Shown here in pieces: positions 2,283 through 44,415 of a DNA stretch of 64,000 bases. Position 1 is the stretch's first letter; every line of letters starts with the position of its first letter. The position numbers and the translations under genes are program-made. The notes beneath the pieces are model-generated. The model was given only the letters and a program-made list of their open reading frames with translations. It was not told the DNA's origin and ran no database searches. The DNA comes from Amoeboaphelidium protococcarum X5 (Eukaryota; Fungi; Aphelidiomycota): assembly GCA_023515725.1 (NCBI GenBank), contig JALDTO010000251.1, positions 806,001 to 870,000 of the forward strand, in the 5' to 3' direction.

Positions 2283-3611
2283 ATGTTGAGGATAAACAAG
2301 GCCTAATATTTATTACATGTTAGACTCGCTAGTTCCTATATCAAGTATAGTAGTTAGGCGACTGTCATTTAGCGGGATGATATCAAGCCGGCGAAAGGTG
2401 GCAGTAGTTGTGATCGATATTATGGACGACGTCAGGTACGAAGGGTTACCATAAGAGACTAAGTTAATGCTTACATCGCTTTGACTAAGCCACGATTATC
2501 AACACTCGTACTACTTACATCTGTATATGGCACCGCTCTGTCACCTTACACTTGCGCCATTGATCCATATCTCATGTTGCATACCATGGTGGGAATGTCG
2601 TTATGTATTGGATCAGCGAATGCTTTTAATCAGATCCTGGAAGTTCCGTATGATTAAATGATGCCGCGTACAAAGAAGAGACCTTTATGTACCAATTTGA
2701 ATTCTGGCGGTGGAATTAAATCGGTGTTAGAGCCGGTCATTAGTAGAAAGTAGGCGCTGACGTTTGCTATCGGCACTGGCCTAGTGGGATCTTTTACTCT
2801 TTTCTCGCTGCCAGTTTTGAATGCCGCTTGGACGTGTGGACTTTTAGGTACGTGTAATATCGCGCTGTATTCCATAATGTACACTTTGGCGAAGAGGCGG
2901 ACAGCTCTGAATACTCATATCGGTGCTGTGGTTGGTGCTATTCCGCCGCTTATAGGCTATGCTGCAACTATTCCAAGTGATGCCATGTCTACCACCTCCG
3001 TATTGGGTCTGTGTGGAATTGACTCGCTTGGTCTCAGTTTAGCTTTTATTCTTTACTGTTGGCAATTTCCACATTTTAATGCTCTATCATTCAGGATTAG
3101 GGACTAGTATAATAAGGCTGGTTACGTGATGAATTCCATTTATAGAGAGCGGTATTCAGCTTTTGAATCGCTACTTGGTTCCATAGGCATTGCTGCCGGA
3201 TCGTTGTGGACTTATCAGGCTGGACTTTCGTGCCTCGGAAGTATTGAATAACATCATTAGTTGCTGAGTGCATATTTCCCTGTGCTCAGCCTCGCTGTAA
3301 ATGCCCCTATGATATACTACAGTTACCGATTCTTCCGTTCATTTGATGGAGAGCCGTGGTTCAAAACTGATCCACAGTCATGTACATCTGTAATGCGACC
3401 GAACTATTCTTTGGGGAAGTAAAGCGTTTAATAATCTGCTGATCATGATAGTGGAGAACGTTAAAAGTAACATACACGTAAAGAATCTGCGCGACTCTGC
3501 TTTAAGGCTTCCCTCTATCATTTACCTGCTCTGATTCTACTAATGCTGCTGTGCAAATCTGAATGGCGAAACAAGTAAAAGTAAGATTCTAACATTGCAG
3601 AGTAATCTTGA
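2283..3611 (+). CDS. COX10: Protoheme IX farnesyltransferase (heme O synthase)
   Basis: LTKPRLSTLV, NAFNQILEVPYDQMMPRTKKRPL, YTLAKRRTALNTHIGAVVGAIPPLIG, WQFPHFNALS, FKASLYHLP motifs in one frame. Confidence 0.95.
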
Positions 3612-3738: not shown

Positions 3739-4378
3739 TCACTTTTAAACTTTAAACATTGATGCAGCAGAGTTGGTCAGACGTCTCTTTTTCTACACGT
3801 AGCATTCTGAGAACACGTATAAACAAATTTGAAAATGTTACCTTATTTGACTTGCGACGTCCATCAATGATAACAACGTTGGGTAGAGTTCTTTTGGTAG
3901 ATGCATGTTAATCAGAGTACCCTGTGAATGCAGTCAAATCTTGTTCAGATACGCGGTGTTCCCATTACAATGGTACGTTCGACTCGTTTCGCGTTAGAGA
4001 TTGACGACTTTGATTATGAGGATTCTGAAACAACAATTATTATTGAGATCGATCAGACGATGAAACCATGGACGGTGGACTATACTGCAGTGATGATTAT
4101 AATGAGCAGTCTGTTTATGTTGAAGTATCACGTGTTTGAGGTAGTGCTTTTTAATGCTTTTACTCCATGGCACTTAAGAGCTCACTGACCAATTTTTAAC
4201 CAATATTCTGGAATTCTTCTTTTGCTTGATTGATCGAGTTTTGACTGTGTTACGCTTGACTTTGAACCAGCTCTGACAACGCGTTTTCTTGAGAGGATAA
4301 CTTATTCATTACTCCTCGTTATATCTCTGATAGAATTTACTTAATCACGGCAATGTCGATAGCTATACGTGCGTCCAT
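3739..4378 (-). CDS. Hypothetical protein with N-terminal coiled coil and basic C-terminus
   Basis: ATG at 4378, Gln-rich helical frame; probable ~49-nt intron (about 3793-3841) giving RRKSNK/KKRRLTNS... then TGA; no family recognised. Confidence 0.5.
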
Positions 4379-29666: not shown

Positions 29667-31346
29667 TCAAGCACTTTCATCAGATTTTGGATAGAGTCCG
29701 TTCAACACGGAGATCCATTCATTAAGATCGTGTTCATTCAACGCCATCAGGTAGTAACTCTTCTTGCCATCAATCAGCGTAAACTTCAAATCACCCTCAG
29801 CCTTCACCTTCATATCACTTGAAAGCATGAAGGACTCTGCAACCTTTGACTTGTCGTTAGGCCTAAAGTAGGACAGCATGAACCCATCATCGCCAACCTT
29901 GGAGAGGGCAAAGTAGCGATCATTCCAAGCCTTGAAGAAATTGCTCTGCTTCTTCAGCAAGGACTGCTGGATAGTAGCCTCTGGGACCTTGTACATTTAG
30001 CTGTCATCGCTGACGGTAGGCTAAGTAGTCTCAGCGCTCTCATCAACAGCAGGGATATCCTTCTCAACGGGGATTGGATTAGGATCATGAATCTCATCCT
30101 TCATGGTGACCTCATCTGATGTTGCGACATCAGCCTCAGCGATCGGCTCAGGCTCCACAGGCGCCAGATCTTCAGCAATAAGATCAGCCTCAACTGGAGC
30201 ATCTTGAGCATCAGCGGAAATCTTTGAGCGCATTTTCTTAAAGGTGACAATATCAACGATTCTTGACACCATGAATGGCTTCTTGACTGGCAAAGCCTTC
30301 TCAATCATCGGATCATCAACAATCGGCTGCGACTACATCGCCCCATCAATAGGCTGCACTTCTTCAGCGACCACCTCTTCGACAACGATGGCCGGCAATT
30401 CTTCCTTCTTACCATCCTCAGACGCTGAGCCAGTATTATCACTTACATCCTCAATCTCTTTATCGCCGACTTCAGATTTACGGCGTGGAAGAGTGAAAAT
30501 ATCAACCACTTTGCCCAGCAGACGCTTAGATGGTTTAGAGTCACCAGCGGTTTCTTCAACATCGTCCTAGTCTGTGGTAGCCTTGACAGCTTCCTCAGTT
30601 ACAACTGCAGCTTCAGCCGTTGTAGACTCGATAACATCAACCTAAGCACGGTCAGCATCAATGTTTTCCATCTCAGTGACAAGCTCCTCGCCATCAGTAT
30701 CAGTAGCATCAGCATGAGACGGCTCCTTCTTCAATTTACCAGGCTTCAACGATTCAAAATGAGCCTTCAACTTAACCAGAGCATTGTCAATAGACGCAGC
30801 ATCGACACAGTTAGCCTTGCTATGCTTCTGAATCACATTGATCCACATGTCGCGGCCCTCAGCTGATTTCGCGCCAAACGTAACATCCTTCAAGCCATCC
30901 ACTTTCAGCGTGAACGCGTGCAGATTGCCAAAATCAGCCAGCACAATATCCTTCACCATACTCAAATCGATGATTCCGGCGATAGAATTATGATCGCTAG
31001 AGTCATAGAGGATCATGCCTTTGGTAGAGACCATAGCCTTGGCAGCAATCTTCATCAACACATCGGAAGTGCCCTTGACTTTACGCGATTTGGACAGAGC
31101 CTTCTTCACAACCAAATCCAAATCTTCAACGCTCAGGCCGTGATCATTACCAAAATACACATACTTTTTGTGCCATAGTTTCAGCGGTCCACTACGCTTG
31201 TACAAGAAGCCTTCGCAAAATTCATTAGTAGACGATGATGACTGCTACTCCTATTACTGGGTTGGAGTCGCCTGCAGTTACTGCGCACCCGCGTCCATTG
31301 ATTCCACATTTTCGATATTCATATTACTATTACTAGATTCTGCCAT
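29667..31346 (-). CDS. Protein with two PH domains and acidic linker
   Basis: EGFLYKRSGPLKLWHKKYV...RDMWINVI and LLKKQSNFFKAWNDRYFAL...LNEWISVL joined in one frame. Confidence 0.85.
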
Positions 31347-31691
31347 ATTACAATATAATGATTAGCGATTAGTATAAGTAAAGAAAAGATCAAGAGATAA
31401 AATGGAGTAGAAAGGAGCAATAGGATATCAAGCTTTGTTACACACGATCATCTGTCTGAGATACCTGATTGGCTGAAACTGACGCACGACTCAGCGCGTC
31501 CTTTAACTTCGACCTGACAGCCGACCGTTACAGTAATTTGGTCGTTGGTCGTTTTTGATCTTCATTGCACTATTTATGTGTCATAAACACTAGAACTAAT
31601 ATCTATGAAGTGAAGTGAAGTGAAGTCAGAGGCTTACCGCCAGAGCTTTAGGTTACTCCGAAACTCAAAATGTGCTTGGTAATGTATAATG

Positions 31692-34600
31692 AAATCTGCT
31701 TCTCGATTGAATACTATCGCGTGACTTAAATCGGCGTGTGTGTGTACGTGAAGTATAGCTAATGAAGCTTTTGTAATACTTCAAGTCGTATTCTTATCAG
31801 CTTGGATCTTTTTACTCAAATGAATTACAGACTTGACATGTTGATTATGCTGTACATATTCGTGTAACGAGTACTGCGCTAAATATCTTTCGTGTTCGTT
31901 GATCAAATAGTAAAGATACAAATTACTTTGCATGACCTTTATTGTATTAAATTTCCATTTTTATCATCAAGTTTTGCATTCCAGAATTTTTATATGACTT
32001 TGCACTGATCTTTTAACTAAAGCAAGTGGTAAATGACTCTCAGTAAACTGATCCCATAACTGCTCTGTCCTTAAATCTAAACCACTACATATTCATCAAC
32101 CCCACACGTTGCGACGGGTAAGCATCTCCAGCAATACCATTCCACCAGCGTAAACATCTGCAGCAAAATACGACACAATTCTGTGCCCAATAGGAGTTGA
32201 ATTGCGAAATTGATGCAGAATCTCAGGTGCCGCATAACTTAAAGATGCACCTTTTATATTACCAGTTTAGAAAGCCTTAACTTTAAGCGTCTGCTCATCC
32301 ACAATCTTTGACAATCCAAAATCAGTCAGTACCGAAAACAACATCCCACTGTGTGGATCAAAATCTAGCAAAATATTTGCAGGCTTTATGTCTAGATGCA
32401 CAATACCGCTTGAATGCATTATGAAGAGCGCCTATGAGAGAGATTTCATCAGATACAGCATCTACGGCTTTGTATATCTAAACTAATACGCCATCTTACT
32501 ATCTCCGTGTATGTAATCCTTCATGGACCCCAATTCATAAAATCGCAATAAGAGACCAGCAGGCTCTTCACTATACGCGTAAATATATGCAAATCTAGGA
32601 TCGTCTTTGAATCGGTACATTATACTTAATTCCTGTAAGAAGATGGCTCGATTGTTATCAGACATACCCCGTGCACTGTCAGAGATTTATTTAAACAGCA
32701 GCTTTGTACCTGCTGGAACTCTCTACTACAATGATGGGTTCAAAACTTCAGCCAAGTAGATAGAGCCAACACCACCTTTGGTCAATAGAAAAGATGTTCT
32801 GAAATCTATTCCACACTATGCTAGCATGAACGCTGGAACGGCAATTATATTGGATGCTACAAGAGTCGGTGATTGCATTTAAGTACCCGCATAAGCACCG
32901 GTATGAGTTACACTGTGAGACATGGTGGAAAGAGTGCTTTGATCCACCATCGATGATCCTTTAGTCTTTCTAGACATTGTACGCATTCTCCGCTTCATCA
33001 CAAAGCATGTTGCTCCAATTGCTATTAGCGCGATAACCGCGATGCCGGCGATTAACGCGTATGCGCCAACCATACTTAGGGATTGGTTTTAATTAGCTTA
33101 GACATCGAGGTTACCAGAGGAAGTTTGCGCTCCACCTTGAGAAGTGCCCAAATTACTTAGATAAGAGCCTTCAGAAAATTATAGAAACCCATTATAAGAA
33201 GTAGATTGTTGCCTAACAGTACGTTGTTTACTTGAAGACATTGAAATCGACTAACTAGTGGATACTAAGCCAGACGAACTAGTCAGAGAGGACACAGCCG
33301 AGGAGTCATTAGCGGAAGACATCATAGCAGACGTGGATGATCCATTCAATACCATCATTTAGTATTGAGTTGTGGCTAACGTAGAAGTAGTAGAGTTCCA
33401 GTAACTTGATAATAGCATTTATGAAGTAACAGACGAGTGAGTCAATACAGTTGACAATGAGGATGTACCAATAGATGTGACATTTGGAGTAAAAGTAGCA
33501 ATAGAAGTACTTGTAATTGTTGTTGACGCAATAGTGGTTGACGCTGGAGTAGTGCTAATGGTGCTGGTTGTCGTAGTGATGGGAATTGTACTCGTGGTGG
33601 TGGTTCTCGTCGTAATCGTAGTCGTTGTAGTCGTGGTGGTCAGTAGATATGATGCCTAGTATGGAGCCAAAGTTGTAGCAACCAGAGTAAAATCCTTATT
33701 TACGAGCACAAACGCATTTCCATTCAGCAGCAAATTACTGGCACCTACACCTATTACTGTACGATCATCGAGCATTGTAAGTGATGTGAATATCATTGCG
33801 TGAGCATCCCCGATTTAAGTTCCATAGATACCGTAGTATAAGCCTCCACTGAAAGTTTACATATTCGTCATGAAAAACCAGCGATCATCTAGCCATGGAT
33901 TAGTAGTACCGACTGACATGACAATATTAGACGATTGATCGACTTGAATATCATATACTCTATCGTATCCTTGCTAACCATACACAAAAAATGAAGTATC
34001 CAATGTGCCATCCAAACCATATCTTACCACAAGAGTAGCATTTTCATTAAAAGAAAAAGCAATGGTCGCATCGAGAGTGTACTAACCATTCCACGTTCCA
34101 CCAGCATACAAGAAACCACGGTGGAATTTCACGGTGTTGAACTCGGTCAAGACGTTAGTGAACAGAGTTCTCTACCATCGCAAAGTGAAGATACCAGAGG
34201 ACGGTACAGCATAGCTGGCCAGGAATCCCTAACGTTAATTAGATTACCACACGCTACCAGCAACGACAAGATTGAGATCATCCTGGTTGACTGAGGATCG
34301 AATCAAATCATCAACACCAAGATCAATGACGATACGATTCAACTGGGCGCCACTGGATGCATTGATAGACATCACTTGACCATCCATACCACCAAAAAAG
34401 CTCAGCGGATCATTCTTAGTCTATCCAGTCACTGTGATTAGATTTTTGACCACAAACAGCTACACATTCCAGCCAATGTTATCCAATCCCGATGTACCAT
34501 ACGTTTAAGTCCAAACCACTGAGCCATTGTTAAGAATACGCGATGCATACACATAGCCGTTAGTAGTATTCTTCACCTGACCAGTGACGTAGACATCACC

Positions 34601-35593
34601 AGTTTACTGATTCAGCGCAATACCATAAGGCATGTCGACACCGGAGACCAGTTGATTAGCTTTCCACGTAAACTGCCTCACAATGGAGCCATTTTTGGAA
34701 ATCACCAGTATCATACTGTTGAAAGTTGTTTTAGCCTAACAGGCAGCATAAGCAGTGTTATCACCAACACGGGCAACCACAGAGTAGCAGTAGGTGGCCA
34801 AATTATTCACCAGAAATTGATTGTTGGCAGAGCTGATGGACATTTCAAATTGCTCGATAGATTTGCCGATTAGTAGTTGAGCTTGTGCTTAAGTTGTCGC
34901 TCTATGAATAAGGATGAATAGTGTCAAAGTGGAAAGGAGATAAAGTAGGATAAGGATTCGCTACAGGTTGCCCGGCTCTTATTCTATTTATAGCCCAGCA
35001 TATAATCTCAAACGAGCCAATCGTTTTTCAACTACTGTACAAAGCACCTTTGTTAGCAAGCACCTACTTTCCCGCAAACATTCAGGTGTGGAACAAAATA
35101 ATTAATCCTATATGATAACCTCACTTTATCGCAGTAATGGGGCATTTCAGTGGCAAAGATGCTTCTTAAAGTCTGCGCATCATTCCCCGTTGAAAAGTAA
35201 TTGTTTCAATTTGCAATGGATATAGATGTCACACAGAAGGATAGTAACGTACTGACTGAAGGTCTTTGTCACGCGTCTTACTAACTCTCTGACGGGATTT
35301 TCCATAAGACTATAATGTGATCCCGTGAACCACTAAAGATGGTTAAATCTCGTCAAAAGTAAATATTAAATGTAGTCGATAGAATCTTCTCATTGTGATA
35401 AATGAACGAGAGATCCAGGGATCAGCACCGTGATTAGGCAATCTAGCCGATTTATACCAACATAAACTGGATTTCGGGCTGAATACATAAAAAGAAGTGA
35501 AAACTTTAAATCAATGCTCCGATAACATATCCATCCATTATGCGAATCAGGTGGCGTGATTGGATGACTTGAATCTGGATATTGGTTTTAATC
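31692..35593. repeat. Segmental duplication, copy 1 (pairs with 39576-43690)
   Basis: Near-identical direct repeat from AAATCTGCTTCTCGATTGAATAC to GGATATTGGTTTTAATC, including flanking non-coding DNA. Confidence 0.97.
32096..34966 (-). CDS. Receptor-like protein kinase copy 1 (beta-propeller ectodomain, Thr/Ser stalk, TM, truncated kinase)
   Basis: GDVYVTG and WTQTYGTSG propeller-type repeats, TM AYALIAGIAVIALIAIGATCFVM-KRR, KGGVGSIY, HLDIKPANIL, DFG, YAAPE, DVYAGG; start uncertain (CTG 34966 or ATG 34843). Confidence 0.88.
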
Positions 35594-37466
35594 TATCAGA
35601 CCACGGTGAAACGGGTGAAGAATTATGCAGTAATCCCACTCTGCACAAGTGAAACAGAGATGCGTCTCTATTTCATAGCGCATCTTACTCTTCTTCTTCT
35701 TCCATTAGATACACACCCAAACATTATTACTATTATGGCTAAACGTACCTGCATATTTGATGACATTGATAATGATACTGACTACTTTGCTGGTCCAAGA
35801 CAAAGTAGTCACTCTCTTAACACGCAAAGGTCCACTGATCAATGGGTCAGAAAGTTTGAGGCGTACTTGACAGCCAAACGCGTCACGTACTGCACTGATT
35901 GGTTCAGATCCTCTGAAGGCAAGAAGACGTTTACCAATTTATTCTCCAACTTTGTTGAAAAAGTGAAAAAAGAAAATGGAGAATATTACACGGCTGATTC
36001 GCTGAAGACTGGTGTTTTTGCCTTAATCAGGTACTTTAAGGATCAAGTGCCTGATGTTCTTCTGGATTTTAACAATGACCATTTGCTGACTTAAAATTTG
36101 CGCACCTTGGATAAAACTATGAAGAAACTGCAAGGTATGGGATTAGGTTTAAGAAAGTAGGCCAGAGTGTTGAGTGATGCTGAGTGGACTGCTCTCGTTA
36201 GGAAGCAAGATGCTGATACTCCTTCAGGATTACTCAATCTTGTGGTACTGCATTTGAGTCTCCACTGTGCATTTCGTGGACAAGAACACGTTGAAGTTAT
36301 GAGATCTCTTTTGAAAAAACATGAAACAGGTGGAATTGTTCATTATTAGTATACGATCCCGGTGGAGAAAAACAATCAAGGTGGTCTGCACGGCAATTAT
36401 GAACCACGAGTTTGCAATATCCCTCCTGGCAGCGCGAAGGACTCTATCTAATTCCGTCCTGTTGATCTGATTGACAAGTATTTGAGTGTGCAACCTGAAT
36501 CTCCTCCTGACAGACTCTTTCTGCAGCCAATGAACTCAAAATCTGGAGTTGTTTGGTACAAAAGATAGCCAATTGGTGTGAATGGATTCGGTTACATATT
36601 GAAACAATGCGTTGAAGAATGTGGTCTGCAAGGCCACATAACATGGCATACTATACGTGCTACTGGTATTACTAGTCTGGCTCAACGCAGAGTTTCCGAG
36701 TAGTTGATCAAGTAGTATTCCGGTCATCGAAGTTACACTGCTGTACCCGAGTACACTCGTCGCACCGCTGATGATAAGATGAATGTCGCACGTTTGCTGC
36801 AATCTTCTAATATTGCGACTGGTCAAGTCACTGAACAGGATATCCTTGCGCTGATTCATGAAGAGGATCAACCGTGCTTGGAGTAAGATGCAGTAGCTAC
36901 TGCTATGAACGAAGTCAGTCAAAATATTAACTCTACGAGCTTAGCTGAGGTTGTTAATACTGCTTAGTCTGCTGCCGTGTAAACTGCTGCTTAGCCTGCT
37001 GCTGTATCAACTGCATATTCTCCTTCTTTGGAACCTGTTTATACAGCTTTGCCTATTATCACTCAACCTCATCCTCAAGTTTCCACCTCCTTGGTTGGCT
37101 CTGGGTCTAAGTTTGCTTCTAATATCAATTATCCATCTGAGAATGAGTAAGACAACTGGAACCAATTGCAATAGCGCGTAAAGCGCCAACGTATCACCAC
37201 TTCTGAGACAGTTGACAATCGTTCCCTGGTAAATAAGTATCGTAACAAAAGTAGTATTGTCAAAAATGCTCAAAATAAGATTATATTTAGTGGAAATGGC
37301 ACTACAATCAATATGAATTTACATTTCCACAATTGAGTCTTGGTAGTCAATCCCACAATATCTGATAAAAATGAAGATTCTGAAGTAATGAAGTAACAAC
37401 TGTTTTCCTGATTAATGTTTGGTAGTTTTCAGTCGCTGTTCCGAGTAGTTGGGCCTGATAGATTAA
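35588..37466 (+). mobile_element. Crypton-like tyrosine-recombinase DNA transposon
   Basis: Perfect 12-bp inverted ends TTAATCTATCAG (35588-35599) and CTGATAGATTAA (37455-37466) enclosing one YR ORF. Confidence 0.8.
35735..37336 (+). CDS. Tyrosine recombinase, DUF3504/ZMYM-Crypton type
   Basis: NTQRSTDQWVRKF, KKENGEYYTADSL, DTPSGLLN, AFRGQEH, EKNNQGGL, WYKRQPIGVN, TWHTIRATG, SGHRS, PEYTR; catalytic R, HxxR, H and Y all present. Confidence 0.92.
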
Positions 37467-38651
37467 CAAGCAATCGTGCACGTCTTGTGAGGCCATTACT
37501 GTACAATTGCTGACTCTGCGCTTACATCTGAAATGCTACCTCACGCGTTCGGAACCATTTTGCATAATTAATTGTACGAACATAGTGAGTCCAATTAATT
37601 TCAGAATTGCATTCTCGCGTGTAAAATGCACGAGAATTTTTCGTGAATTCCACTCTTTTCTGAAACGGATAGCTAGTTGACTCTGAAATGACATCTCTAA
37701 CCTGAAACGAACTTGATGTTGAAGATTCTCTTAAACTCATTCTTTCTTCATGAAGCATTCTATAACACTATAAACATAAATAAGAGCTAGTTTAAAGACA
37801 TTTATAAACTAGATATTTAAGATTTACAGACCAGGACTAGTCCTAGGATTTAGTTATTCATTCCACTTTGAAAAGTGCGCGCCTTGTTTCATGATGTTAT
37901 TCATTCCCTTAATATATAATTGCTGTATAGAGTATAATGTGACGTAAACTTTTCTGATATTGTTCGCAGAAGTTCCATGCACATTCTAGGACACAACATA
38001 CTGTATTCCTGACTTCTATTACGTCCCTCTAACAGCAGGATTTCAGAAAATCGCTGTCTAATGATGAAATGAAAATACGGTACATATAATGCTTTGGCCA
38101 TCGCAAACGCGTCTTCAATTGACATTCACACTTAATTGCCTCAGGCTTACAGATTTAGCTACAGTATCGACGTTATAAATATCATGCTTATAGATACTTT
38201 AGCCAGTTTACTTTTGGGTGCAGTAATTCATTATAAACGTCTTATAACTTGCCAAAAGCTACCGACACGTATAGCGATAAGTAGACCGTTACCTTATTGA
38301 GATACTTTGATACGTTGAGACTTTGTGTTCTTAGTTCTACTAAGCACATTATTATAGAACTTTCTAATTATGCATATTGCATTGATGTGACTAGTAAAGA
38401 AAATGGATAGAAGGGGGGATGAACAATGTGGATACTAGTCGCACCACTCAAATTTCAGTACAATGAATAAGCATGCAAACTAGGCAACGAGTAACTAAAT
38501 CGTTTACAGATTGACATGATTTAATACAAACCAATGTTTCCATTCCCTTCAAAATTCCGTGTGCATTTTACACGCCATTGAGTCTGCAATTAACTCGTAA
38601 TTGCACTGTCAGAAAATGTGCGATAGCGGAAAATCAAAGTCATTGTTGCGC

Positions 38652-39574
38652 ATTAAGTTCAATTAATACGAATGTGTGAGTATTAATTTACTGAATGTAA
38701 TATCCCTCACAAGCTCGTGAAATTACATTGTTCTAATTACTCTCACTTCGTTCGTGCAATATATTTGACAACAACAACACTCACTTCGTTCGTGTCATTG
38801 TTGTTTCAGAAAAAGAAGAAATTTCATTTATACAGTTTGATCACAGTTACTCTCGTCTTCTCAGATATCGAATCGGCTTGTTTCCGACATGAATTGGACA
38901 ATTCTTCTGCAAGCTTCTTTTTATTGCAGCAGTACTGATAGTTCAATTTTACTACACCATTACAGGACTGTTGGCCGCTCTTGATACAGAGGGCAATTCA
39001 GCAGTAGATGCGACATTGTTTCAAATTTCTCACCACATTCACAACCAGTAGATTTTCCGCCAATCCTACTAGTTACTGCGTTGATCGGCCCTTTATTTGT
39101 TCTAGACCAAGTCAGAAATTGCGACTATCTCGTCGATAAATCTTTATGCAAGCTTTCAACCTGGAACTTCTTCTCTTGAGATCTGGCCTTCTTCAGCTAC
39201 TTGACGCACTTTAACACCTAATTTGCCTTGGCAGGCTGAGCTCCTTGTGGCGTCCATCTGAAATGAACGTTAACTTTACCACAATTACTCGGGCAGACCA
39301 CATTTAGTTATGTACTCAGAGGATTTTGATCAGAGAGATGTGACCATCTCAGCATTGTGTCCTCAAATCTGATTTATCTAGATCTTTCCCAGTAAGACAT
39401 AGAACTCTCATGCATCAACTGTTCCACGGAGGTAGTAGGAAAAGCTTTGCATATAACTCTTGCACTGAGATTCACTACTCTTTGGAGCTATAATCTTTGA
39501 TGCTGTTTCAGAAAAAGGTGGCGCAACAATGGAATTTTCCGGCAATCGCACTCGGACGAGTGCAATTACCTATA
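38652..39574. mobile_element. Putative non-autonomous element with hairpin-rich ends enclosing a LINE fragment
   Basis: Stacked hairpins 38661-38805 with CTCACTTCGTTCGTG twice (38742, 38780); hairpin GGCAATCGCACTCG-GA-CGAGTGCAATTACC at 39541-39570; boundaries approximate. Confidence 0.5.
38861..39510 (-). pseudogene. 5'-truncated non-LTR retrotransposon ORF2 fragment (Tad1/I-like)
   Basis: LQRVVNLSARVICKAFPTTSVEQL (post-RT region), VHFRWTP, LTWSRTNKGPIN, CECGEKFETMSHLLLNCPLY (CCHC knuckle), VQFMSETSRF then TGA; no RT core. Confidence 0.85.
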
Positions 39575-39978
39575 CAAATCTGCTTCTCGATTGAATACTA
39601 TCGCGTGACTTGAATCGGCATGTGTACGTGAAGTATAGCTAATGAAGCTTTTGTAATACTTCAAGTCGTGTTCTTATCACCTTGGATCTATTGACTCAAA
39701 TGAACCACAGACTTGATATGTTGATTATACTGTACATATTCGTGTAACGAGTACTGCGCTAAACATCTTTCGTGTTTGTTGATCTTATAGTAAAGAAGAT
39801 ACAAGTTATTTTGCATGACCTTTATTGTATTAAATTTCCATTTTTATCATCAAGTTTTGCATTCCAGAATTTTTATATGACTTTGCACTGATCTTTTAAC
39901 TAAAGCAAGTGGTAAATGACTCTCAGTAAACTGATCCCATAACTGCTCTGTCCTTAAATCTAAACCACTACATATTCA

Positions 39979-42900
39979 TCAACCCCACACGTTGCGACGG
40001 GTCAGCATCTCCAGCAATACCACTCCACCAGCGTAAACATCTCCAGCAAAATACGACACAATTCTGTGCCCAATAGGAGTTGAATTGCGAAATTGATGCA
40101 GAATCTCAGGTGCCGCATAACTTATAGATGCACCTTTTATATTACCAGTTTAGAAAGCCTTAACTTTAAGCGTCTGCTCATCCACAATCTTTGACAATCC
40201 AAAATCAGTCAGTACCGAAAACAACATCCCACTGTGTGGATCAAAATCTAGCAAAATATTTGCAGGCTTTATGTCTAGATGTACAATACCGCTTGAATGC
40301 ATTATGAAGAGCGCCTATGAGAGAGTTTTCATCAGATACAGCATCTACGGCTTTGTATATCTAAACTGGTACGCCATCTTACTATCTCCGTGAATGTAAT
40401 CCTTCATGGACCCCAATTCATAAAATCGCAATAAGAGACCAGCAGGCTCTTCACTATACGCGTAAATATAAGCAAATCTAGGATCGTCTTTGAATCGGTA
40501 CATTATACTTAATTCCTGTAAGAAGATGGCTCGATTGTTATCAGACATACCCCGTGCACTGTCAGAGATTTATTTAAACAGCAGCTTTGTACCTGCTGGA
40601 ACTCTCTACTACAATGATGGGTTCAAAACTTCAGCCAAGTAGATAGAGCCAACACCACCCGTGGTCAATAGATAAGATGTTCTAAAATCTATTCCGCACT
40701 ATGCTAACATGAACGCTGGAACGGCAATTATATTGGATGCTACAAGAGTCGGTAATTGCATTTAAGTACCCGCATAAGCACCGGTATGAGTTACACTGTG
40801 AGACATGGTGGAAAGAGTGCTTTGATCCACCATCGATGATCCTTTAGTCTTTCTAGACATTGTACGCATTCTCCGCTTCATCACAAAGCATGTTGCTCCA
40901 ATTGCTATTAGCGCGATAACCGCGATGCCGGCGATTAACGCGTATGCGCCAACCATACTTAGGGATTGGTTTTAATTAGCTTAGACATCGAGGTTACCAG
41001 AGGAAGTTTGCGCTCCACCTTGAGAAGTGCCCAAATTACTTAGATAAGAGCCTTCAGAAAATTATAGAAACCCGTTATAAGAAGTAGATTGTTGCCTAAC
41101 AGTACGTTGTTTACTTGAAGACATTGAAATCGACTAACTAGTGGATACTAAGCCAGACGAACTAGTCAGAGAGGACACAGCCGAGGAGTCATTAGCGGAA
41201 GACATCATAGCAGACGTGGATGATCCATTCAATACCATCATTTAGTATTGAGTTGTGGCTAACGTAGAAGTAGTAGAGTTCCAGTAACTTGATAATAGCA
41301 TTTATGAAGTATCAGACGACTGAGCCAATACAGTTGATAATGAGGATGTACCAATAGATGTGACATTTGGAGTAAAAGTAGCACTAGATGTACTTGTAAT
41401 TGTTGTTGACGCAATAGTGGTTGACGCTGGAGTAATGCTAATGGTGCTGGTTGTCGTAGTGATGGGAATTGTACTTGTGGTGGTGGTAGTCGCTGTAGGA
41501 ATTGTACTTGTGGTGGTGGTTCTCGTCGTAGTCGTAGTCGTTGTAGTTATTGTTGAATTGGTAGTGGTTGAAGTCGTACTAGTCGTGGTGGTCGTTATCA
41601 TAGGAGTCGTCGTAGTCGTGGTGGTCGTTATCATAGGAGTCGTCGTAGTCGTGGTGGTCGTTGTGATAGGAGTCGTTGTAGTCGTGGTGGTCGTTATCAT
41701 AGGAGTCGTTGTAGTCGTGGTTGTCAGTAGATATGATGCCTAGTATGGAGCCAAAGTAGTAGCAACCAGAGTAAAATCCTTATTTACGAGCACAAACGCA
41801 TTTCCATTCAGCAGCAAATTACTGGCACCTACACCTATTACTGTACGATCATCGAGCATTGTAAGTGATGTGAATATCATTGCGTAATTATCCCCGATTT
41901 AATTTTCAAAGATACCGTAGTATAAGCCTCCACTGAAAGTTTACATATTCGTCATGAAAAACCAGCGATCATCTAGCCATGGATTAGTAGTACCGACTGA
42001 CATGACAATATTAGACGATTGATCGACTTGAATATCATATACTCTATCGTATCCTAGCTAACCATACACAAAAAATGAAGTATCCAATGTGCCATCCAAA
42101 CCATATCTTACCACAAGAGTAGCATTTTCATTAATAGAAGAAGCAATGGTCACATCGTAAGTGTAATAACCATTCCACGTTCCACCAGCATATAAGTAAC
42201 CACGGTGGAATTTCACGGTGTTGAACTCGGTCAAGACGTTAGTGAACAGAGTTCTCTACCATCGCAAAGTGAATATACCAGAGGACGGTACCGCATAGCT
42301 GGCCAGGAATCCCTAACGTTAATTAGATTACCACACGCTACCAGCAATGACAAGATTGAGATCATCCTGGTTGACTGAGGATCGAATCAAATCATCAACA
42401 CCAAGATCAATGACAATACGATTCAACTGGGCGCCACTGGATGCATTGATAGACATCACTTGACCATCCATACCACCAAATAAGCTCAGCGGATCATTCT
42501 TAGTCTATCCAGTCACTGTGATAAGATTTTTGACCGCAAACAGCTACACATTCCAGCCAATGTTCTCCAATCCCGATGTACCATACGTTTAAGTCCAAAC
42601 CACTGAGCCATTGTTAAGTAAACGCGATGCATACACATAGCCGTTAGTAGTATTCTTCACCTGACCAGTGACGTAGACATCACCAGTTTACTGATTCAGC
42701 GCAATACCATAAGGCATGTCGACACCGGAGACCAGTTGATTAGCTTTCCACGTAAACTGCCTCACAATGGAGCCATTTCTGGAAATCACCAGTATCATAC
42801 TGTTGAAAGTTGTTTTAGCCTAGCATGCAGCATAAGCAGTGTTGTCACCAACACGGGCAACCACAGAGTAGCAGTAGGTGGCCAAATTATTCACCAAAAA

Positions 42901-43050
42901 TTAATTGTTGGCAGAGCTGATGGACATTTCAAATTGCTCGATAGATTTGCCGATTAGTAGTTGAGCTTGTGCTTAAGTTGTCGCTCTATGAATAAGGATG
43001 AATAGTGTCAAAGTGGAAAGGAGATAAAGTAGGATAAGGATTCGCTACAG
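39979..43050 (-). CDS. Receptor-like protein kinase copy 2
   Basis: Same architecture as copy 1, frame intact, 67 extra stalk codons; start uncertain (CTG 43050 or ATG 42927). Confidence 0.88.
41450..41725 (-). repeat. Coding minisatellite, (P-M/I-I/T-T7-8)n mucin-like repeats
   Basis: Tandem 30-33-bp units such as GTAGTCGTGGTGGTCGTTATCATAGGAGTCGTC. Confidence 0.9.
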
Positions 43051-44004
43051 GTTGCCCGGCTCTTATTCTATTTATAGCCCAGCATATAATCTCAAACGAG
43101 CCAATCGTTTTTCAACTACTGTACAAAGCACCTTTGTTAGCAAGCACCTATTTTCCCGCAAACATTCAGGTGTGGAACAAAATAAATAATCCTATATGAT
43201 AACCTCACCTTATCGCAGTAATGGGGCATTTCAGTGGCAAAGATGCCTCCATAAGTCTGCGCATCATTCCCCGTTGAAAAGTAACTGTTTCAATTTTGCA
43301 ATTGATATAGATGTCACACAGAAGGATAGTAACGTACTGACTGAACGACTTTGTCACGCGTCTTACTAACTCTATGACGGGTTTTTCATAAGACTATAAT
43401 GTGATCCCGTGAGCCACTAAAGATGGTTAAATCTCGTCAAAAGTAAATATATATATATGAAGTCGATAGAATGTTCTCATTGTGATAAATGAACGAGAGA
43501 TCCAGGGATCAGCACCGTGATTAGGCAATCTAACCGATTTATACCAACATAAACTGGATTTCGGGCTGAATACATAAAAAGAAGTGAAAACTTTAAATCA
43601 ATGCTCTGATAACATATCCATCCATTACTGGTTACTATGCGAATCAGGTGGCGTGATTAAATGATTTGAATCTGGATATTGGTTTTAATCAATTAATAAA
43701 AGTGGTAAAACGTATAATAACGCCACTGTTTCAATTACAAGTTTTTGATTTAATGTTGTCGAATATAGAACTAGAACTATTGCAACTTAGTTATCTTTAT
43801 TTACTTTATCAAATGCCTCTGACGTGAGCTTCAATCAACAGCCGGTCGTTACATTGATTGCTCCACCTTACCAGTTCTCATTGCACAATTCATGTGTCAT
43901 CCATCATCCAAAACTTGAATAAATATCTATAAAGTTCATATATATATATATATATCATATACACACACTCATCATCATCATTGATTGTACAGTAGATGCA
44001 ATCT

Positions 44005-44415
44005 TCATTAACCGGAATATACCACGCAGTTATTCTCAGTCTCCCATAATTCAATTTTATCCAATGTTATAGTGGATGGAAGCTTTGAGGCAATCTCTTG
44101 GTAAAAGAAAACTGACAAATTTTCGGTGGTGGAAACTCGATCAGCAAACCACTCCACGTCCATGTCCAAGTGCATGTGATCAACTTGCTGCACCACTGAC
44201 TTTACAATCTACTTCAAGTCTGATATATTGAAGATCATACCTGTACTCTAATCTATTTCGCCAAGTATATGCACCAGGAGAGTGTAGTTGTGTCCATGTC
44301 CATTTGGGTTATTACACTTGCCATACAGCTCCCGGTTCTCTTCAACACTCATGGCTTTATTATGCAATCTATGAGCGCATGAGAAAGTCTCTCTCCTAAT
44401 AAGTCGGGCTTTCAT
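44005..44415 (-). CDS. PTS: 6-pyruvoyl-tetrahydropterin synthase
   Basis: FSCAHRLH, YGKCNNPNGHGHNY, DHMHLD, STTENL, ETENN. Confidence 0.96.

What the first reader, a model, noticed from the sequence alone, without database searches (positions are those of the whole stretch)
31692..43690. Receptor-kinase gene duplication whose inner breakpoints sit at mobile-element ends (possible recombinase-linked receptor amplification)
Seen: copy 1 homology ends at 35593, inside the left inverted end of the YR element. Copy 2 homology begins at 39576, a few nt after the hairpin end of a second element. The 4-kb spacer is thus bounded on both sides by element termini. Known: tyrosine-recombinase transposons are thought to move via circles. 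Inference: a circle carrying element plus kinase gene could integrate at the resident gene by single crossover, giving exactly gene-spacer-gene. That would make Crypton-type elements agents of receptor-family expansion in a parasitoid. Best candidate here for an undescribed system.
Basis: partly seen in the sequence, partly recalled or inferred. Interest (0 to 1): 0.85.

Follow-up and report, generated by a model that had tools for sequence, protein, structure and literature searches.

The report
Two recombinase transposons between duplicated kinases
In an algal parasite, two copies of a receptor-like kinase gene are separated only by two small recombinase-type transposons fused to each other; the fusion looks recombinase-made, but it is a one-off, and these transposons do not explain the expansion of the receptor family.

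Summary
The duplication is real (2.5% substitutions; the homeologous locus has no kinase) in Amoeboaphelidium protococcarum (TAA/TAG=Gln). Independent copies and an empty site show both inner breakpoints are exact element termini: kinase 1|element A at 35588|35589, element B|kinase 2 at 39575|39576. A encodes an intact tyrosine recombinase but runs past 37466 and has lost its right end. B is a non-autonomous derivative of a DUF3504 Crypton carrying a LINE fragment. The A|B join (37604-37608) fuses B's left terminus to a look-alike right-end site in A, probably a recombinase product. The general claim fails: none of 24 other Crypton-type sites lies within 10 kb of a kinase hit, and 15 other tandem kinase pairs sit 2.8-4.3 kb apart with none of the catalogued sites near them. 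Crypton-made rearrangements are known from Chlamydomonas. The scan noted other Cryptons and kinase arrays in this genome.

The parts
29667..31346 (-). Left neighbour gene, PH-domain protein (559 aa under code 6); present in the homeolog
   Evidence: PH_6 43 bits over cut-off
31508..31611 (+). r1: left copy of an old, diverged ~100-bp direct repeat bracketing the whole kinase block; the homeolog on C264 has one chimeric copy and no kinase
   Evidence: local score 43 versus shuffle maximum 34 of 1000
31692..35588 (.). Duplicated unit, copy 1; its left edge ATAATG|AAATC is an empty B-type target
32096..34843 (-). Receptor-like kinase K1, 915 aa: propeller-like N-terminal region, Thr/Ser stalk, one TM helix, non-RD kinase (HLD motif); open under code 6
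   Evidence: propeller reading is from sequence pattern, not folded here
35589..37608 (+). Element A: Crypton-like, canonical left end TAATC, right end truncated (62-165 nt missing including the terminal hairpin)
35738..37336 (+). Tyrosine recombinase ORF, 532 aa, R180, H304, R307, H330, Y339 intact
   Evidence: (PF00589 30.1 bits, over cut-off); 33% identical to DUF3504 protein P0005
37452..37466 (-).
37575..37591 (.). 17-bp micro-inversion between 9-bp inverted repeats, relative to two other A copies
37592..37608 (+). A|B join: look-alike of B's right-end site inside A, fused at AATT to B's left terminus; G where all five other B left ends have T
37605..39575 (+). Element B: non-autonomous Crypton-like element (about 1.27 kb without the LINE), internal inverted copy of its left end near 38551-38590, terminal hairpin near 39546-39567, canonical right end CCTATAC
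   Evidence: autonomous parent with 563-aa DUF3504 recombinase in L068
38816..39500 (-). 5'-truncated non-LTR retrotransposon fragment inside B, flanked by a 14-17 bp direct repeat (38799-38815 / 39501-39517)
   Evidence: zf-RVT 19.6 bits, below cut-off; other B copies have the empty site
39576..43685 (.). Duplicated unit, copy 2; its right edge GGTTT|TAATC is the empty A target
39979..42927 (-). Receptor-like kinase K2, 982 aa; longer Thr stalk, 31 amino-acid differences from K1, 18 in the N-terminal region
43829..43935 (+). r2: right copy of the old direct repeat
44005..44415 (-). Right neighbour gene, 6-pyruvoyl tetrahydropterin synthase; adjacent to the PH-domain gene in the homeolog

Best explanation
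An ordinary tandem duplication of the kinase came first, as for many other kinases of this genome, possibly by unequal crossing-over at the ~100-bp repeats r1/r2 (inferred). Two unrelated Crypton-like elements then integrated, each at a normal 5-bp W-W-A-T-Y target, in the short redundant spacer between the copies: A upstream of K1's start, B downstream of K2's stop (canonical junctions and matching empty sites shown; order inferred). A tyrosine recombinase then paired B's left end with a look-alike of B's right-end site inside A and deleted the roughly 0.4-0.5 kb between them: A's real end and the whole old spacer (terminus-exact join shown; enzyme and geometry inferred). That leaves kinase-A'-B-kinase with breakpoints on element ends, both elements crippled and stuck. 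The elements mark the breakpoints but did not make the extra gene.
For: Fifteen other adjacent kinase-hit pairs lie 2.8-4.3 kb apart with no A/B or CryptonF site near them; the fetched C181 array has 80-bp spacing and no element sequence. 0 of 12 other A/B sites and 0 of 12 CryptonF sites lie within 10 kb of a kinase hit. The block is bracketed by r1/r2 and the homeolog has lost it leaving one chimeric repeat. These elements cluster with other repeats: B at C212 lies about 10 bp from another repeat's end, B at C214 inside one, a LINE sits in this B. Outer flanks are clean empty targets, so no second allele or later excision is needed. Weak hint: metagenome run X12 lacks intact A and this B+LINE copy yet shows two kinase-promoter variants.
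Against: The elements do not look younger than the duplication: private substitutions B 42/1206 (3.5%) and A 22/1001 (2.2%) against about 1.6% per lineage between K1 and K2 at near-neutral sites (p=0.002 for B, 0.29 for A), though these are upper bounds and gene conversion would shrink the K value. No remnant of the old spacer survives, so the prior tandem state is not observed. Both rare elements must have hit one ~330-bp interval in the same orientation. The six closest paralogs of this kinase are dispersed single copies.
Confidence: 0.5

Rival explanations
1. The recombinase mis-join made the duplication directly. B sat left of a single kinase and A right of it, on two alleles (K-A and B-K) or on sister chromatids (B-K-A twice). 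One unequal exchange between B's left end and the look-alike site in A gave K-A'-B-K; in the sister version the two intact outer elements later excised cleanly, leaving only the crippled inner pair.
For: All three inner junctions are terminus-exact; the look-alike site is unique outside B's own end; element ages are at least the duplication age; recombination of a Crypton end with a new target, and clean excision, were observed de novo in Chlamydomonas (PMC9977147); an intact B-family recombinase exists in another strain.
Against: Needs a second allele, for which there is no sign here (the homeolog lacks the kinase), or two further excisions. A random gene would be expected, yet the duplicated gene belongs to a class that forms tandems without elements. 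G instead of the invariant T at the join is not the canonical product.
Confidence: 0.25
2. One reading: in B-K-A the recombinase mis-excised from B's left end to the look-alike site in A, releasing a 7.9-kb circle B-K-A' whose junction is the A|B join; the circle re-entered a kinase copy by one homologous crossover.
For: The join has the arm-spacer-arm form of a circle junction and B-left / A-internal are in excision orientation in B-K-A. The product would be the observed sequence.
Against: Same needs as the direct exchange plus one more step. A recombinase-driven reinsertion would have opened the circle at the join and moved the kinase elsewhere; no such copy exists. No association elsewhere.
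Confidence: 0.15
3. Assembly artefact: haplotypes K1-A and B-K2 joined at A|B.
For: No listed contig of four runs carried the window's version of 37468-37608; in the source-like run X2 only the C155-type A end was laid there. A 610-bp orphan contig duplicates part of K1.
Against: A 4-bp overlap is not an assembler join, and it falls on a biologically meaningful site next to a private micro-inversion; no N gaps in the window; no second contig holds A-right or B-left with these flanks; X2 has filter holes elsewhere in sequence that is certainly present (37034-37227); K1 and K2 differ by 2.5%, homeologs by 7.3-7.8%.
Confidence: 0.07

Closest known systems
CryptonA / DUF3504 tyrosine-recombinase transposons (Kojima and Jurka 2011, PMC3212892; fungal Glomhoppers, PMC13465315)
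   Same: Single recombinase ORF with intact R-H-R-Y, no GCR1_C/NDC10 domain, non-autonomous deletion derivatives, no true terminal inverted repeats or target duplication; DUF3504 over cut-off in the B-family protein
   Different: Found in an aphelid, written in code 6; ends resolvable to the base (constant TAATT/TAATC left, target-derived WWATY right) with a subterminal inverted copy of the left end, CTCACTWCGTTCG repeats and a terminal hairpin, whereas those papers report no or poorly conserved terminal repeats. Aphelids are not mentioned in the Glomhopper paper.
CryptonF-1_cRei-mediated rearrangements in Chlamydomonas reinhardtii (Lopez-Cortegano et al. 2023, PMC9977147)
   Same: Element end at one breakpoint and a target-like site at the other; 5-bp donor/target microhomology; clean excision
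   Different: There: inversions and translocations seen de novo, duplications tied to a LINE. Here: a CryptonA-like pair, a join between two different families, at a tandem gene duplication, inferred from one locus.
Starships and composite transposons carrying cargo genes
   Same: A recombinase element pair could in principle bracket and loop out a host gene
   Different: The kinase lies outside the element ends, and no kinase copy bounded by element ends exists at a new site.
Receptor-like kinase repertoire of aphelids (Mikhailov et al. 2022, cited in PMC10608142; paper itself not held)
   Same: Large family of single-pass kinases, many in tandem arrays
   Different: This pair alone, among those tested, has elements in the spacer.

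Membership tests
CryptonA (DUF3504) transposon | Tyrosine recombinase with intact R-H-R-Y tetrad as the only ORF | tested here: met
   R180, H304, R307, Y339; PF00589 over cut-off; same for the B-family protein P0005
CryptonA (DUF3504) transposon | DUF3504 domain over the Pfam cut-off | tested here: inconclusive
   Met for P0005 (58.4 bits); no PF12012 match for element A in a stop-read-through genome search whose control also rang nowhere; A is 33% identical to P0005 over 542 columns, E 2.6e-82; weak QRICH1 hit
CryptonA (DUF3504) transposon | Short (4-6 bp) terminal direct repeats reflecting target microhomology, no TIR, no true TSD | tested here: met
   Termini table of 9 copies and an empty homeologous site: degenerate 5-bp repeat, one core in the empty site
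CryptonA (DUF3504) transposon | Dispersed copies with different flanks, non-autonomous derivatives | tested here: met
CryptonA (DUF3504) transposon | Placement in the CryptonA clade of a recombinase tree | not tested
   No Repbase reference set in hand; nearest hits outside the species all carry PF12012
CryptonA (DUF3504) transposon | Excision as a circle and reintegration | not testable with these tools
   Only contigs were available; no circle joint among those listed
CryptonF | NDC10_II / GCR1_C-type recombinase | tested here: not met
   PF16787 hits 15 other places of the genome, not this one
Cargo-carrying recombinase element (Starship-like or composite) | Host gene enclosed by element ends and moved to a new site | tested here: not met
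   Kinases lie outside the ends; five paralog loci have no element sequence in about 1.5-kb flanks
Crypton-mediated rearrangement | Breakpoints at exact element termini with target-like sites at the partner ends | tested here: met
Crypton-mediated rearrangement | Element shown to precede and cause the rearrangement | tested here: inconclusive
   Age proxies overlap within a factor of two; the other strain's locus could not be reached
   0 of 24 other sites within 10 kb (about 1.0 expected for all 25 sites); 15 other tandem pairs without catalogued sites. Kinase and element lists are lower bounds.

The most novel reading that the evidence does not exclude
A Crypton recombinase mis-paired the left end of one family with a look-alike site in another family across a host gene, and so duplicated a receptor kinase (by unequal exchange or through a gene-carrying circle). 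This would be a first case of a Crypton-made gene duplication and a trapped circle-type junction for the DUF3504 group. It would stay a single event; that it drives the family's expansion has a probability of about 0.03.
Probability: 0.4. Interest if true: 0.6.

Novelty: new member of a known kind. Interest (0 to 1): 0.38.

Why it matters
DUF3504/CryptonA elements have never been shown to move and their ends are poorly defined. This locus and its relatives give two families with intact recombinases, base-resolved ends, a donor/target rule and a natural mis-joined product, so the excision-circle model and cross-family end recognition become directly testable. If the join made the duplication, Cryptons would join the list of elements that create paralogs. 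It does not explain the receptor-kinase expansion of this algal parasite.

Tried and rejected
Right end at 37466: rejected, other copies continue. Target-site duplication of 3-4 bp: rejected in favour of a constant left core and target-derived right core after the empty site at C264:1363105 was read. Copies as the two homeologs: rejected, the homeolog is on C264 at 7.3-7.8% divergence and lacks the gene. One element inserting by chance exactly on a pre-existing head-to-tail junction: rejected as a double coincidence. Second example at C155 (tandem gene copies beside A): the duplicated unit does not end at A. Nine near-identical CryptonF copies: no flank-to-flank repeats within 0.6-1 kb; four of five tested are simple insertions. 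Attempts to reach the same locus in another strain failed: metagenome scans empty, no full-length A protein found, neighbour-gene search empty, exact look-ups empty. The genome paper is not held. Proteins were searched only as stop-free pieces by reference; the joined code-6 proteins were examined only in local scripts and not sent to any search.

Full report
Setting. Long ORFs appear only when TAA/TAG are read as Gln. Close relatives of the recombinase are named Amoeboaphelidium protococcarum by NCBI. The genome is 23.6 Mb in 346 contigs with homeologous pairs about 7.5% apart in coding DNA and 16% at four-fold sites; genome-wide duplication in this species is reported in PMC10608142.

The duplication. 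Self-comparison gives 31692-35596 against 39576-43693, 2.5% substitutions plus a 201-bp difference in the Thr stalk. Both kinase ORFs are open, 915 and 982 aa; paralogs start at the same Met, so there is no obvious cleavable signal peptide in this subfamily. The homeologous region on C264 joins the PH-domain gene directly to the PTPS gene: the whole 12.2-kb block is absent, and a single chimeric copy of a ~100-bp repeat stands where the window has r1 and r2. r1 and r2 differ more from each other than r1 does from the homeolog, so the kinase was probably ancestral and lost on C264 (inference).

The spacer. It is two elements. A begins at 35589 and carries a 532-aa recombinase with all catalytic residues. 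B has full copies at C212, C214 and C207 and an autonomous parent in the other strain with a 563-aa DUF3504 recombinase 33% identical to A's. Decayed recombinase elements with the same end motifs lie at C207:712k and C157:21k. The window's B holds a LINE 3' fragment that the other B copies lack.

The termini. The empty homeologous site of the C207 copy defines the rule: the element starts with TAATT (A: TAATC), ends with CCTATAC (A: CTGTTAC), and inserts just before a W-W-A-T-Y target without duplicating it. This is the donor/target microhomology described for Cryptons (PMC3212892; PMC9977147). By this rule K1|A and B|K2 are canonical junctions, copy 2's right flank is the empty A site and copy 1's left flank the empty B site. 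Such targets are common (15.6 per kb), so their presence says little alone. The A|B join is different: A stops inside its subterminal repeats at CAATTA-N6-GAATT, a pattern that occurs on the + strand of the window only there and at B's own right end, and B starts at its second base. A random deletion would rarely end on B's terminal core, so I read the join as recombinase-made (about 0.7), with the caveat that the G replaces an otherwise invariant T and a private 17-bp inversion lies beside it, which also fits template switching.

What made the second gene. The same reaction, B-left with the look-alike in A, gives the observed sequence in three geometries: as a short deletion between elements that had settled in the spacer of an existing tandem pair; as an unequal exchange between alleles or sisters; or as a loop-out circle that re-enters by homology. 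The first needs no second allele and no later excision, and fits a gene class that forms tandems freely. The other two fit the age proxies slightly better. Sequence alone cannot decide. I give 0.5, 0.25 and 0.15, with 0.07 for mis-assembly because none of the listed contigs bridged A|B (list truncated, holes present). The kinase-A junction is bridged in run X5, and run X7 from another sample holds intact A and B+LINE at about 0.5% difference, so these parts are not private to the assembly.

The general claim. A kinase piece found 62 places; 13 A/B-family sites and 12 CryptonF sites were compiled. Apart from this locus none is within 10 kb of a kinase hit, and 15 other adjacent pairs sit 2.8-4.3 kb apart, about one gene length. 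The C181 array and five close paralog loci hold no element sequence. Both lists are lower bounds and other Crypton families may be missed, but no enrichment is visible. Other element copies are mostly simple insertions; two stand at breaks in homeolog synteny, which is suggestive but untested.

Comparison and verdict. The elements work like, and very likely are, CryptonA-type transposons; tree placement was not tested. Crypton ends at rearrangement breakpoints are known from Chlamydomonas, where they made inversions and translocations but not the duplications. The locus is thus a well-resolved new instance of known kinds, with a 0.4 chance of being a first Crypton-made gene duplication. It is not a system for receptor amplification. 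Interest 0.38.

Noticed in passing
L073-L081 (G000 C136, C146, C154, C155, C156, C158, C200, C213, C214): A very young CryptonF family: 2,490 bp, nine copies at 99-100% identity, 5-bp TANTT/TAATT terminal repeats; the empty homeologous site of the C200 copy lies in this window near 3824.
   Followed up: partly
L076 (G000:C155:434822-437313): This CryptonF copy sits at a synteny break: left flank homeolog on C298, right flank homeolog on C146. Real translocation or a mis-join through an identical repeat.
   Followed up: partly
L002 (G000:C155:462993-464157): The second A copy has no contiguous empty site; the homeolog C146 has 13.6 kb of other, partly repetitive DNA there. A small membrane-protein gene beside it is tandemly duplicated, not at A's end.
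   Followed up: partly
L068:5839-8076: Intact autonomous B element with a 563-aa DUF3504 recombinase in another strain's assembly; not found in this genome.
   Followed up: yes
window 33790-34130 versus 41870-42210: Amino-acid differences between K1 and K2 cluster in the N-terminal region (18 non-synonymous, 11 synonymous codons) compared with the TM and kinase part (7 and 9).
   Followed up: partly
window 39881-40700 in run X5: Contig depth about 2000 over the kinase against about 50 over the recombinase ORF and none over the promoter; if this unlabelled run is RNA, both are expressed and the kinase strongly.
   Followed up: no
window 31616-31633 and 43811-43829: Weak inverted match at the outer edges of the block, resembling the elements' hairpin motif; probably chance.
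   Followed up: no
window 32096 and 39979: Both kinases, and their paralogs, end shortly after subdomain IX.
   Followed up: no
L007:1440-1500 and 2720-3300: B at C214 is inserted in another multi-copy repeat marked by GGCGCGCC palindromes.
   Followed up: no
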